A stretch of 33,243 nucleotides of DNA from Octopus sinensis (GCF_006345805.1 NW_021829583.1:1-33243), one strand, 5' to 3'; positions 23,840 to 24,393 are shown, counted from the stretch's first letter. Notes: generated by a model from the sequence alone, not told the origin. Numbers and translations: made by a program.

Positions 23840-24393
23840 GCCCTGATGCAGTACCAGGCAGTGGCTTTCATGGCTTCTGATCTTAACTGATTGGAAGTGT
23901 TATCATGTACATTGTTTTGTCTTGGTATAAAAGATGGGCTACAGCAAATATTCTGCTCAATACCACAGATTTGCTTGTCAGTTGTTTGACCTTAACCAGT
24001 TGAGCATGTCCCTTAGTGGCTGACGATATGTGCATCTCTGATCACGAGCAGAAGTAGTGGGGGAGCATCATAGCCATGTGTTGAGAAGGATTCTTTGGGG
24101 TTTGAATAATTCACCTCTGGAAACATGGGTGTTTCGTTCAACGTCCTTAAATAAACCTTATTCAGGGACCTTTTGAGTGGGATGGGTTACTCGATCTGAA
24201 GAAAATTCTAACTGGGCTCCACCTGCAAGGTCATGCGCTGTTTATCTTGATATGAGATCACCATGTCGCGCACATATGGTTGTGATGCATGTGCCTGGTG
24301 TACCCTTATCAGACGGGTAGTCATGATGGGTATACTGGGCTTCGTATATTTTACCCCAGTGTCACTTTGATGGCATGCTCTGCTCGCTCACTC
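23840..24393 (+). mobile_element. family D non-coding element, longest copy (554 bp), with 12-bp TSD AATAATAATGAT
   Basis: Homologous to 3050-3531 (-) and 27898-28002 (+). AATAATAATGAT lies at 23828-23839 and 24394-24405. No recognisable ORF. Confidence 0.88.

What the first reader, a model, noticed from the sequence alone, without database searches (positions are those of the whole stretch)
23840..24393. Family D: candidate non-autonomous, (AAT)n-specific retroposon riding on R4/Dong machinery
Seen: three copies (554, 482 and 105 bp) share the same 3' end (...ctcactc followed by AAT) and differ only by 5' truncation. They follow the same strand rule as A-C, one has a 12-bp TSD, and they carry the shared 3' hairpin. 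There is no ORF, no obvious tRNA A/B boxes, and no visible sequence similarity to A-C. Established: common 3' ends with variable 5' truncation and TSDs are hallmarks of TPRT, and non-autonomous partners of RLE elements (R2 SIDEs, EhSINEs) are known. Inference: a microsatellite-targeted SINE/SIDE-like parasite that I do not recognise as described. Alternative: the long 3' UTR of a fourth autonomous family.
Basis: partly seen in the sequence, partly recalled or inferred. Interest (0 to 1): 0.82.

Follow-up and report, generated by a model that had tools for sequence, protein, structure and literature searches.

The report
Octopus retroposon that targets AAT repeats
This is a real non-coding mobile element of about 555 bases in octopus genomes that inserts in one orientation into AAT microsatellites, beside Dong-type LINEs whose enzymes it probably borrows; it appears undescribed but is a variation on a known theme.

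Summary
The window, from an Octopus-type genome, carries three family D copies: 23840-24393 (+, 554 bp), 3050-3532 (-, 483 bp) and 27898-28002 (+, 105 bp). They are 93-95% identical, share the 3' end ...CTCACTC|AAT and differ by 5' truncation. None has an ORF over 50 aa, a tRNA or Rfam match, or similarity to the co-resident RT/RLE LINE families A-C.

D-derived peptides led to contigs from unnamed public runs and a Tara metagenome holding relatives at 64-77% identity. Five independent full-length relatives start at the same nucleotide as the 554-bp copy and end at the same ...CTCWCW-type motif. Most sit in short AAT tracts in otherwise unique DNA, and none runs into coding sequence. D is therefore a discrete non-autonomous retroposon of about 555 bp, not a truncated LINE 3' UTR.

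Specificity for (AAT)n and for one strand is well supported. Dependence on Dong/R4 machinery rests only on shared target, orientation and similar age. No tail homology to A-C exists, and the "shared 3' hairpin" is no better than chance for A-C. The 12-bp TSD has a 3-5% chance expectation.

Verdict: a new variant of a known kind, of moderate interest. Repbase and Dfam could not be checked.

The parts
23840..24393 (+). D1, a full-length family D copy (554 bp). The true 5' end may lie 3-4 nt further upstream, because an (A/G)AT precedes the element in all full-length relatives.
   Evidence: The 5' end GCCCTGATGCAG coincides with the 5' ends of L002, L005, L006, L007 and L010. The 3' end is ...GCTCACTC|AAT.
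3050..3532 (-). D2, a 5'-truncated copy (D positions 72-554) in a small isolated (AAT)n tract: (AAT)~27 upstream at 3533-3612 and (AAT)11 downstream at 3017-3049.
   Evidence: 94.6% identical to D1.
27898..28002 (+). D3, a strongly 5'-truncated copy (D positions 450-554).
   Evidence: 93.3% identical to D1, 94.3% to D2.
23828..23839 (+). Upstream copy of the putative 12-bp target-site duplication AATAATAATGAT. Its partner is at 24394-24405.
   Evidence: an exact 12/12 match, but the chance expectation in these arrays is 3-5%.
24394..24405 (+). Downstream copy of the putative 12-bp target-site duplication.
23874..23897 (+). 5' hairpin CTTCTGATC-TTAACT-GATTGGAAG.
   Evidence: Predicted in the fold of D1. 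Read by eye in the family alignment, it is mostly kept in relatives, with C-G to T-A in L002 and G-T to A-T in L010. Not tested statistically.
23960..23999 (+). The most conserved central block of the D superfamily (D positions 121-160, ...CAGATTTGCTTGTCAGTTGTTTGACCTTAACC...).
   Evidence: 83-85% identity to D1 across relatives that are 64-77% identical overall..
24293..24340 (+). Long 3' hairpin (GCCTGGTGTACCC ... GGGTATACTGGGC, with an inner stem), ending 53 nt before the 3' end. It is a candidate recognition element for the reverse transcriptase.
   Evidence: 84.5% of cells are paired against 29-43% in slid controls. Three pairs show compensatory changes. The covariation score is reached by 44 of 500 shuffles.
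19674..23839 (+). (AAT)n array upstream of D1: the target tract, on the same strand as the element.
24394..25445 (+). (AAT)n array downstream of D1.
17534..19675 (+). Family B RT/RLE LINE copy (5'-truncated) in the same array and orientation: a candidate source of the machinery.
   Evidence: Pfam RVT_1; the best solved relatives are R2 retrotransposon proteins.
26358..27750 (+). Family C RT/RLE LINE copy (5'-truncated), ending ...ACATAG|AAT, about 150 bp upstream of D3.
10837..14752 (+). Family A RT/RLE LINE, the longest copy in the window, ending ...CTAATG|AAT.

Best explanation
Family D is a discrete, non-coding, non-autonomous retroposon of about 555 nt from octopus-type genomes. It belongs to an older superfamily whose members keep the same 5' and 3' termini, a conserved central block and a long 3' hairpin.

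Proposed mechanism. Its RNA is copied into DNA by target-primed reverse transcription at a nick in (AAT)n microsatellites, always with the element's sense strand on the AAT strand. Incomplete reverse transcription produces the 5'-truncated copies of 483 and 105 bp. The enzyme most likely comes in trans from a Dong/R4-type LINE (RT plus a C-terminal restriction-like endonuclease), the kind that fills the same AAT arrays in the same orientation.

Shown: the unit is discrete; its termini are conserved; it has no coding capacity; copies form a 5'-truncation series; insertion is specific for AAT tracts and for one strand; and it has no homology to LINE families A-C.

Inferred: the identity of the mobilising enzyme; recognition through the 3' hairpin and terminus; and how the RNA is transcribed and gets its precise 5' end.
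For: - Three copies share a 3' end and differ in 5' extent.
- D-derived peptides hit many Octopus bimaculoides models and diverged Logan/ENA contigs.
- Relatives at 64-77% identity span the whole unit.
- In five independent full-length relatives the homology stops at D1 position 1 and at the ...CTCWCW-type 3' end. Their outer flanks are unrelated to each other.
- AAT-type tracts on the sense strand flank D1-D3, L002, L004, L006, L007, L010 and L011. The truncated O. bimaculoides copy behind P0004 runs into a poly-isoleucine stretch, which fits an ATT-type repeat on the ORF strand, that is AAT on the element's sense strand.
- No ORF, tRNA or Rfam family was found, and P0129 has no Pfam domain.
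- Families A-C carry RVT_1 (A and B), zf-RVT (A and C, below Pfam's cut-off) and CCHC plus PD..D..K motifs. Their best solved relatives are R2 proteins. All end at AAT in the same orientation, as do L001 and L014 from other samples.
- D copies are 93-95% identical pairwise and A/B copies 96-97%, consistent with overlapping periods of activity.
- Literature: Dong elements target TAA microsatellites, including in a snail (PMC3812793). Dong-R4 LINEs are abundant and recently active in Octopus (PMC13282606). Shared target preference has been used to infer trans-mobilisation of SINEU by Tx1-Mar (PMC4494074).
Against: - D shows no sequence similarity at the 3' tail or the 5' end to families A, B or C, or to four other Dong-like LINE contigs. 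A stringent LINE/SINE pair would normally share a tail, so no partner has been identified.
- The "shared hairpin" is not better than chance for A-C.
- One diverged relative (L005) has (TGT)n(ATT)n, the opposite repeat strand, at its 3' side and no clean AAT tract upstream.
- The constant ...CTCACTC|AAT boundary cannot separate "target AAT" from "the element's own (AAU)n tail".
- The relatives were found with a peptide covering D positions 1-196, so the sample is biased towards copies that contain the 5' region. That bias does not explain why homology stops at one nucleotide.
- The source organisms of the Logan/ENA contigs are unknown.
Confidence: 0.6

Rival explanations
1. D is non-autonomous and AAT-associated but is mobilised by a different LINE, not a Dong/R4 RLE element. 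An example would be an APE-type RTE, CR1 or I-like element whose RNA ends in (AAU)n. Annealing of that tail to AAT-rich nicked DNA, rather than endonuclease specificity, would place copies in AAT tracts.
For: - D shares no tail with families A-C.
- Octopus RTE elements carry a microsatellite as most of their 3' UTR (PMC9115989), and I elements end in TAA repeats (PMC3747384).
- Possible TSDs of 12-16 bp in D1 and L002 fit APE-type insertion as well.
- The body/AAT boundary cannot tell tail from target.
Against: - AAT tracts lie upstream as well as downstream of copies in unique loci (L002, L006, L010, L011), so a pre-existing AAT tract was the target.
- D sits deep inside the same kilobase arrays, on the same strand, as three RLE LINE families.
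- No LINE with a D-like tail was seen in the available sequence, although very little sequence was available.
Confidence: 0.25
2. D is the long 3' UTR of a fourth autonomous RT/RLE LINE family, and all three window copies are 5'-truncated LINE copies.
For: - All three window copies have different 5' ends.
- 5' truncation is the rule for the resident LINEs.
- Frame +1 of D1 is open for its first 16 codons before a stop.
Against: - Five diverged full-length relatives and D1 all begin at the same nucleotide, with unrelated, non-coding flanks immediately upstream.
- No relative extends further.
- A 554-bp UTR would be 2.5-5 times longer than those of A-C, roughly 110-220 bp.
- The 16-codon stretch does not resemble the conserved C-terminus of families A-C.
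Confidence: 0.07
3. D is not a retroposon at all. The copies would arise from segmental duplication within the arrays, or D would be a DNA transposon, MITE or Helitron.
For: - The AAT arrays align with each other at about 80% and contain recurrent purine-rich islands, so block duplication does occur here.
- The region around 29968-32188 is a clear segmental duplicate.
Against: - The copies lie on both strands in unrelated flanks, including an isolated small AAT tract at 3017-3612, and in unique loci in other samples.
- There are no terminal inverted repeats and no 5'-TC/CTRR-3' Helitron ends (sequence).
- A nested series with a fixed 3' end and variable 5' end is the signature of reverse transcription from the 3' end.
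Confidence: 0.03

Closest known systems
SINEU / Tx1-Mar pairs of crocodilians (Kojima 2015, PMC4494074)
   Same: A non-autonomous retroposon whose insertion sites show the same narrow target preference as a co-resident target-specific LINE. Trans-mobilisation is inferred from that shared preference, and transcription possibly depends on the flanks.
   Different: SINEU has a U1/U2 snRNA-derived head and an APE-type Tx1 partner, and it targets a Mariner transposon. D has no recognisable RNA-gene head, is about 555 nt long, targets a microsatellite, and its presumed partner is an RLE-type LINE.
R2 SIDEs
   Same: Non-coding parasites of a site-specific RLE LINE that insert at the same target in the same orientation.
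   Different: SIDEs are derived from R2 itself and keep its 5' ribozyme and 3' UTR. D has no similarity to resident families A-C at either end and no Rfam ribozyme match.
Dong / R4-clade LINEs, (TAA)n-specific (PMC3812793, PMC4640811; Octopus Dong-R4 in PMC13282606 and PMC9115989)
   Same: The same target microsatellite, the same strand rule, a 3' end without poly(A) abutting AAT, and frequent 5' truncation.
   Different: Dong elements are autonomous (RT plus RLE). D has no ORF and no sequence homology to them.
Classical octopus SINEs (OR1/OR2/OK; tRNA-Core and tRNA-Deu families; PMC4824008, PMC4758252, PMC8967140)
   Same: Short non-coding retroposons of octopus with a conserved central block shared by diverged families.
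   Different: Those have tRNA-derived Pol III heads and are not reported as microsatellite-specific. D has no tRNA-like head.
EhSINEs / EhLINEs of Entamoeba (PMC1635306)
   Same: Non-autonomous partners of RLE-type LINEs.
   Different: EhLINE/EhSINE lack targeted insertion (PMC1635306). From my own knowledge, they share 3' ends. D is target-specific and shares no tail with the LINEs seen here.

Membership tests
Non-autonomous TPRT retroposon (generic) | Non-coding unit with a fixed 3' end and a series of 5'-truncated copies | tested here: met
   copies of 554, 483 and 105 bp share one 3' end. L011 and P0004 are further truncated copies.
Non-autonomous TPRT retroposon (generic) | Discrete full-length unit: 5' ends pile up at one position and copies do not continue into a LINE ORF | tested here: met
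   D1, L002, L005, L006, L007 and L010 begin at the same nucleotide, and their upstream flanks are unrelated. Caveats: the sample is small and was found with a 5'-region peptide.
Non-autonomous TPRT retroposon (generic) | Target-site duplication | tested here: inconclusive
   A 12/12 TSD at D1 has a 3-5% chance expectation. A possible 16-bp TSD exists at L002. The microsatellite target makes TSDs ambiguous, and no empty sites were available.
Classical SINE (Pol III) | 5' head derived from tRNA, 7SL, 5S or snRNA, with an internal A/B-box promoter | tested here: not met
   ARAGORN found none. Rfam at E<=10 found none. Only AGTGG of the A-box consensus is present (sequence).
Classical SINE (stringent LINE partner) | 3' tail homologous to the 3' end of the partner LINE | tested here: not met
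   The D-family nhmmer profile finds nothing in LINE families A-C, L001, L012, L013 or L014. Other octopus LINEs could not be tested.
SIDE-type element (internal deletion derivative of an RLE LINE) | 5' and 3' ends homologous to the autonomous parent | tested here: not met
   no similarity to A, B or C. A parent outside the window is not excluded.
SIDE-type element | 5' self-cleaving (HDV-like) ribozyme | tested here: not met
   No ribozyme family in Rfam at E<=10 over 23700-24500. A divergent ribozyme is not excluded.
Target-specific retroposon sharing the target of a resident LINE (SINEU/Tx1-Mar type logic) | Same target sequence and orientation as a co-resident target-specific LINE | tested here: met
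   D and LINE families A-C all abut AAT on their sense strand. 9 of 10 informative D-type flanks are in the AAT orientation; L005 is the exception.
5'-truncated 3' UTR of an R4/Dong LINE | Longer copies continue upstream into the RT/RLE ORF | tested here: not met
   no relative extends beyond D1 position 1.
CORE-SINE superfamily | Central CORE domain | tested here: inconclusive
DNA transposon / MITE / Helitron | Terminal inverted repeats, or 5'-TC...CTRR-3' ends with A|T insertion | tested here: not met
   Termini are GCCCTG... and ...CTCACTC: no TIR and no Helitron ends.

The most novel reading that the evidence does not exclude
The D superfamily is an ancient, cephalopod-wide lineage of structured RNAs of about 555 nt, independent of Pol III, that parasitise Dong-type restriction-like-endonuclease LINEs without sharing any tail sequence with them. 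Recognition would be by structure (the conserved 3' hairpin and terminus) or by relaxed template choice at the AAT nick. Repeated insertions, each duplicating 12-16 bp of AAT, would help build the kilobase (AAT)n arrays that serve as a safe haven for both partners. This would be the first microsatellite-specific non-autonomous partner of an RLE LINE.
Probability: 0.25. Interest if true: 0.7.

Novelty: new variant of a known kind. Interest (0 to 1): 0.5.

Why it matters
Site-specific RLE LINEs such as R2, R4 and Dong are now being studied as programmable gene-insertion tools, so what their proteins accept as an RNA template is a practical question. A natural non-coding RNA that reaches the same microsatellite target, with no sequence in common with the resident LINEs, would give a minimal natural template for defining those recognition rules.

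It would also add a missing category, a microsatellite-specific non-autonomous retroposon. That would help explain how octopus genomes accumulate very long, TE-studded AAT arrays. For annotation, D-type copies are probably filed at present as "unknown" or "unclassified SINE".

If D is already in Repbase or Dfam, or if its partner proves to be an ordinary LINE with a matching tail, the finding reduces to a routine SINE/LINE pair with an unusual target.

Tried and rejected
- Exact-pattern scans for D 21-29-mers and for the conserved core in metagenome, viral and bacterial/archaeal genome collections returned nothing. A megablast against phages also returned nothing.
It should have been run frame by frame.
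- P0003 is UniRef-only and has no contig on record.
- Exact look-up of ten window ORFs found none in the collection, so the source assembly and species could not be named.
- The run accessions of the Logan contigs appear in no held paper.
- The partner search was negative. The D profile finds nothing in families A-C, L001 (B-like, 95%), L012, L013 or L014.
- The CORE-domain idea arose from a local resemblance (GTTGTTTGACCTT...AACC..TGAGC).
- RNAalifold did not recover the long 3' hairpin on its own. It was then tested explicitly.
- The HDV-like ribozyme idea for the precise 5' end found no Rfam hit, and the only complement to positions 1-7 (TCAGGG) lies about 320 nt downstream. It was rejected.
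- The Helitron and MITE readings were rejected from the termini.
- The Albertin 2015 paper (PMC4795812) is not held.

Full report
**The observation.** The stretch 23840-24393 is a unique-sequence island of about 42% GC inside a multi-kilobase degenerate (AAT)n array. blastn of this stretch against the window finds exactly three copies.
- D1: 23840-24393 (+), 554 bp.
- D2: 3050-3532 (-), covering D positions 72-554, 94.6% identical.
- D3: 27898-28002 (+), covering positions 450-554, 93.3% identical.

All three end ...CTCACTC and are followed directly by AAT repeats. All three are also preceded by AAT repeats on the same strand. D2 sits in a small isolated tract, (AAT)~27-D2-(AAT)11, within otherwise unique DNA. 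The copies are therefore not products of one local duplication.

The remaining sub-claims were checked as follows.
- The longest ORF is 50 aa.
- ARAGORN finds no tRNA in the window.
- Rfam at E<=10 finds only one noise hit.
- The 12-bp duplication AATAATAATGAT flanking D1 is exact. However, 4-5% of random breakpoints in these arrays show a 12/12 match, and this 12-mer has a frequency of 2-3%. It counts for little.

**The neighbours.** The other unique islands in the arrays are 5'-truncated or near-full copies of three LINE families.
- A and B match Pfam RVT_1; A and C match zf-RVT below Pfam's cut-off.
- They carry a CCHC motif followed by an RHD...PD(I/V)VV...LIDM...K motif, read directly from the translations.
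- Their best solved relatives are R2 retrotransposon proteins.

They are RLE-type LINEs of the kind annotated as Dong-R4 in octopus (PMC13282606, PMC9115989, PMC8967140). Each ends without poly(A), directly at AAT, with its sense strand on the AAT strand. Copies on the minus strand obey the same rule. Dong elements are known to target TAA microsatellites, including in a snail (PMC3812793). B-like and related LINE contigs from a sewage metagenome and a Tara metagenome also end in (AAT)n.

**Where the window comes from.** A 50-aa spurious ORF on the minus strand of D hits only Octopus bimaculoides "uncharacterized proteins", at up to 96% identity. The family B LINE is 95% identical at the DNA level to a contig from a sewage metagenome whose record name carries the code IT_BO. 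The window is therefore from an Octopus-type genome. Neither the exact species nor the source assembly could be identified.

**The decisive test: discrete unit or truncated LINE UTR?** No eukaryotic DNA collection was searchable by nucleotide, so I worked through peptides.

One O. bimaculoides model, P0003, reads on the minus strand through D's 5' end. It loses similarity to D1 at D1 position 1 and continues into a non-repeat flank. Searching P0003 against the 1.84-billion-protein representative library returned diverged D-like ORFs from Logan and ENA contigs. Their DNA could be fetched as loci L002-L011.

blastn and a D-family nhmmer profile show that these contigs carry relatives at 64-77% identity spanning essentially the whole unit. 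In five independent full-length relatives the homology begins at the same nucleotide as D1:
- L002: ...aataataataataaat|ACCCACATGCAATACCCGGCAGTGG
- L006: ...cataataataaat|GCCTTGATACAATAACAGACAGTGG
- L007: ...aaataaatagat|GCTGTGATTCTACACCAGACATCAC
- L005: ...ctgaat|GCAAACC
- L010: (AAT)7AAAT|GTCACAAAAC

The 3' ends match as well: ...CTCTCACTT|agtaataataatgat in L002, ...CTCTCATTT|aatagtaatgat in L004, and ...TCACTCC|ataataatg in L007. Outside the short AAT-type tracts the flanks are unrelated to each other and non-coding.

L011 (Tara) is a further 5'-truncated copy directly preceded by AAT-type repeats in the same orientation. The truncated O. bimaculoides copy behind P0004 runs into a poly-isoleucine stretch on the ORF strand, which fits the same arrangement. 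No copy continues upstream into an ORF.

It argues strongly against the "long 3' UTR of a fourth LINE" alternative.

Two caveats apply. The sample is small. It was also found with a peptide from D positions 1-196, which favours copies containing the 5' region. That bias does not explain why homology stops at one nucleotide.

One detail: an (A/G)AT precedes the element in all full-length copies, so the true 5' end may lie 3-4 nt upstream of 23840.

**Anatomy of the unit.** Conservation across the superfamily is uneven.
- The best-kept blocks are D positions 121-160 (83-85% identity to D1; window 23960-23999), positions 361-400 and positions 441-520.
- A 5' hairpin lies at 23874-23897. By eye it is mostly maintained in relatives; this was not tested statistically.
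- A long 3' hairpin (24293-24340) ends 53 nt before the 3' end. It is paired in 84.5% of cells across relatives, against 29-43% when partners are slid. Three pairs show compensatory changes, and the covariation score is reached by 44 of 500 shuffles. That is moderate support, not proof.
- D1 as a whole folds better than shuffles (z = -3.5).

**The link to Dong.** D shares no sequence with families A, B or C at either end, nor with four other Dong-like LINE contigs. It is therefore neither a SIDE-like internal-deletion derivative of the resident LINEs nor a SINE with their tail.

The "shared 3' hairpin" does not survive testing. The last 100 nt of A, B and C fold no better than dinucleotide shuffles (z = -1.27, -0.04, -0.07). 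The small stems they contain are unremarkable.

What remains in favour of Dong is circumstantial:
- the same target microsatellite and the same strand;
- the same kind of 3' junction, with no poly(A) and a body abutting AAT;
- co-residence in the same arrays;
- comparable copy divergence, 93-95% for D against 96-97% for A and B;
- the precedent that shared target preference is accepted evidence for trans-mobilisation (SINEU and Tx1-Mar; PMC4494074).

A real rival is a different LINE whose RNA ends in (AAU)n and integrates by tail annealing. Octopus RTE elements have microsatellite 3' UTRs (PMC9115989). The constant body/AAT boundary cannot separate an element's own tail from its target. Upstream AAT tracts in unique loci (L002, L006, L010, L011) do show that a pre-existing AAT tract was hit in either case.

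**Comparison with known systems.** D works like a target-specific non-autonomous retroposon in the manner of SINEU/Tx1-Mar or R2 SIDEs. It fails the defining features of a classical SINE, having no Pol III head and no shared tail with the LINEs available. It also fails those of a SIDE, having no homology to a parent and no detectable ribozyme. It is not a Helitron or MITE.

I found no paper describing a microsatellite-specific non-autonomous partner of Dong/R4 elements. The 2026 O. vulgaris annotation lists 893 "unclassified SINE" families, among which D might already sit (PMC13282606). Repbase and Dfam could not be consulted.

**Verdict.**
- Novelty: a new variant of a known kind.
- Interest: moderate, 0.5.
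- Confidence in the full best explanation, including the Dong partner: about 0.6.
- Confidence that D is a discrete AAT-specific non-autonomous retroposon: about 0.85.

Noticed in passing
window 10784-10836 (+); 29503-29602 (minus-strand sense); 26335-26356: An (AAG)n tract sits at or just upstream of the 5' junction of LINE copies. (AAG)17 lies directly before the 5' UTR of the long family A copy. (AAG)33 lies before a family A fragment truncated at a quite different internal position (29102-29504, minus strand). (AAG)7 lies about 25 nt upstream of the family C copy. These could be additions made at the 5' junction during integration, or a second microsatellite preference.
   Followed up: partly
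window 20403-20429, 21039-21070, 21487-21524, 22228-22263, 23161-23196, 23621-23682, 25156-25194, 28243-28341, 28990-29016: The AAT arrays contain at least nine recurrent purine-rich islands, (AAG)n-like and typically ending ...GAAGAATGATAATAATGATAAT. Different arrays align to each other at about 80%. The arrays therefore have higher-order or block-duplicated structure rather than being simple slippage products.
   Followed up: partly
window 30372-30512 and 31328-31468 (partial copy at 30261-30306): A GC-rich island of about 140 bp (CCGAGAGGGACGGCAGCAGGACGCAGCCGC...GCGCTACCGGAAAG) lies exactly where an ATT array switches to an AAT array and is followed by AAT. It occurs twice because of a segmental duplication at about 92% identity (29968-31221 against 30921-32188). 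It could be the 3' end of yet another AAT-targeting element. It has no similarity to D.
   Followed up: no
window 17687-19510 (family B ORF); The RT/RLE protein has relatives at 54-64% identity over its full length in corals (Oculina), shrimps (Penaeus), fish (Nothobranchius), cnidarians (Exaiptasia, Clytia) and many metagenome contigs. That is unusually high conservation across phyla for a LINE and may reflect horizontal transfer or strong constraint in this Dong-like lineage.
   Followed up: no
L001 (ENA ERZ22666216, record name carrying the code IT_BO), 1-1983: A sewage metagenome contig carries an octopus family B LINE at 95% DNA identity, abutting an inverted family A 3' end and ending in (AAT)n. 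Octopus DNA, presumably from food, is present in sewage assemblies.
   Followed up: partly
L010 (Logan SRR9969974), sense orientation 26-947: This D-like copy has a clean (AAT)7AAAT 5' flank and matches the D profile only to about position 361, then continues with about 560 bp of unrelated sequence. It is either an interrupted or 3'-deleted copy, or a modular relative with a different 3' half.
   Followed up: no
L005 (Logan ERR12921340), 29-601 minus strand: This is the most diverged full-length relative for which both flanks are visible (68% identity). It has (TGT)3GCT(ATT)5, the opposite repeat strand, at its 3' side and no clean AAT tract upstream. It is the one exception to the strand rule and may be a lineage with a different target.
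   Followed up: no
window 12-506 (+) and 9061-9507 (+): These ORFs resemble mariner/Tc1-type transposase fragments (...DNARPHVS..., ...PDLTPMDIFFF...). The left third of the window (1-10700) is a different landscape of AT/TA dinucleotide repeats and DNA-transposon remnants.
   Followed up: no
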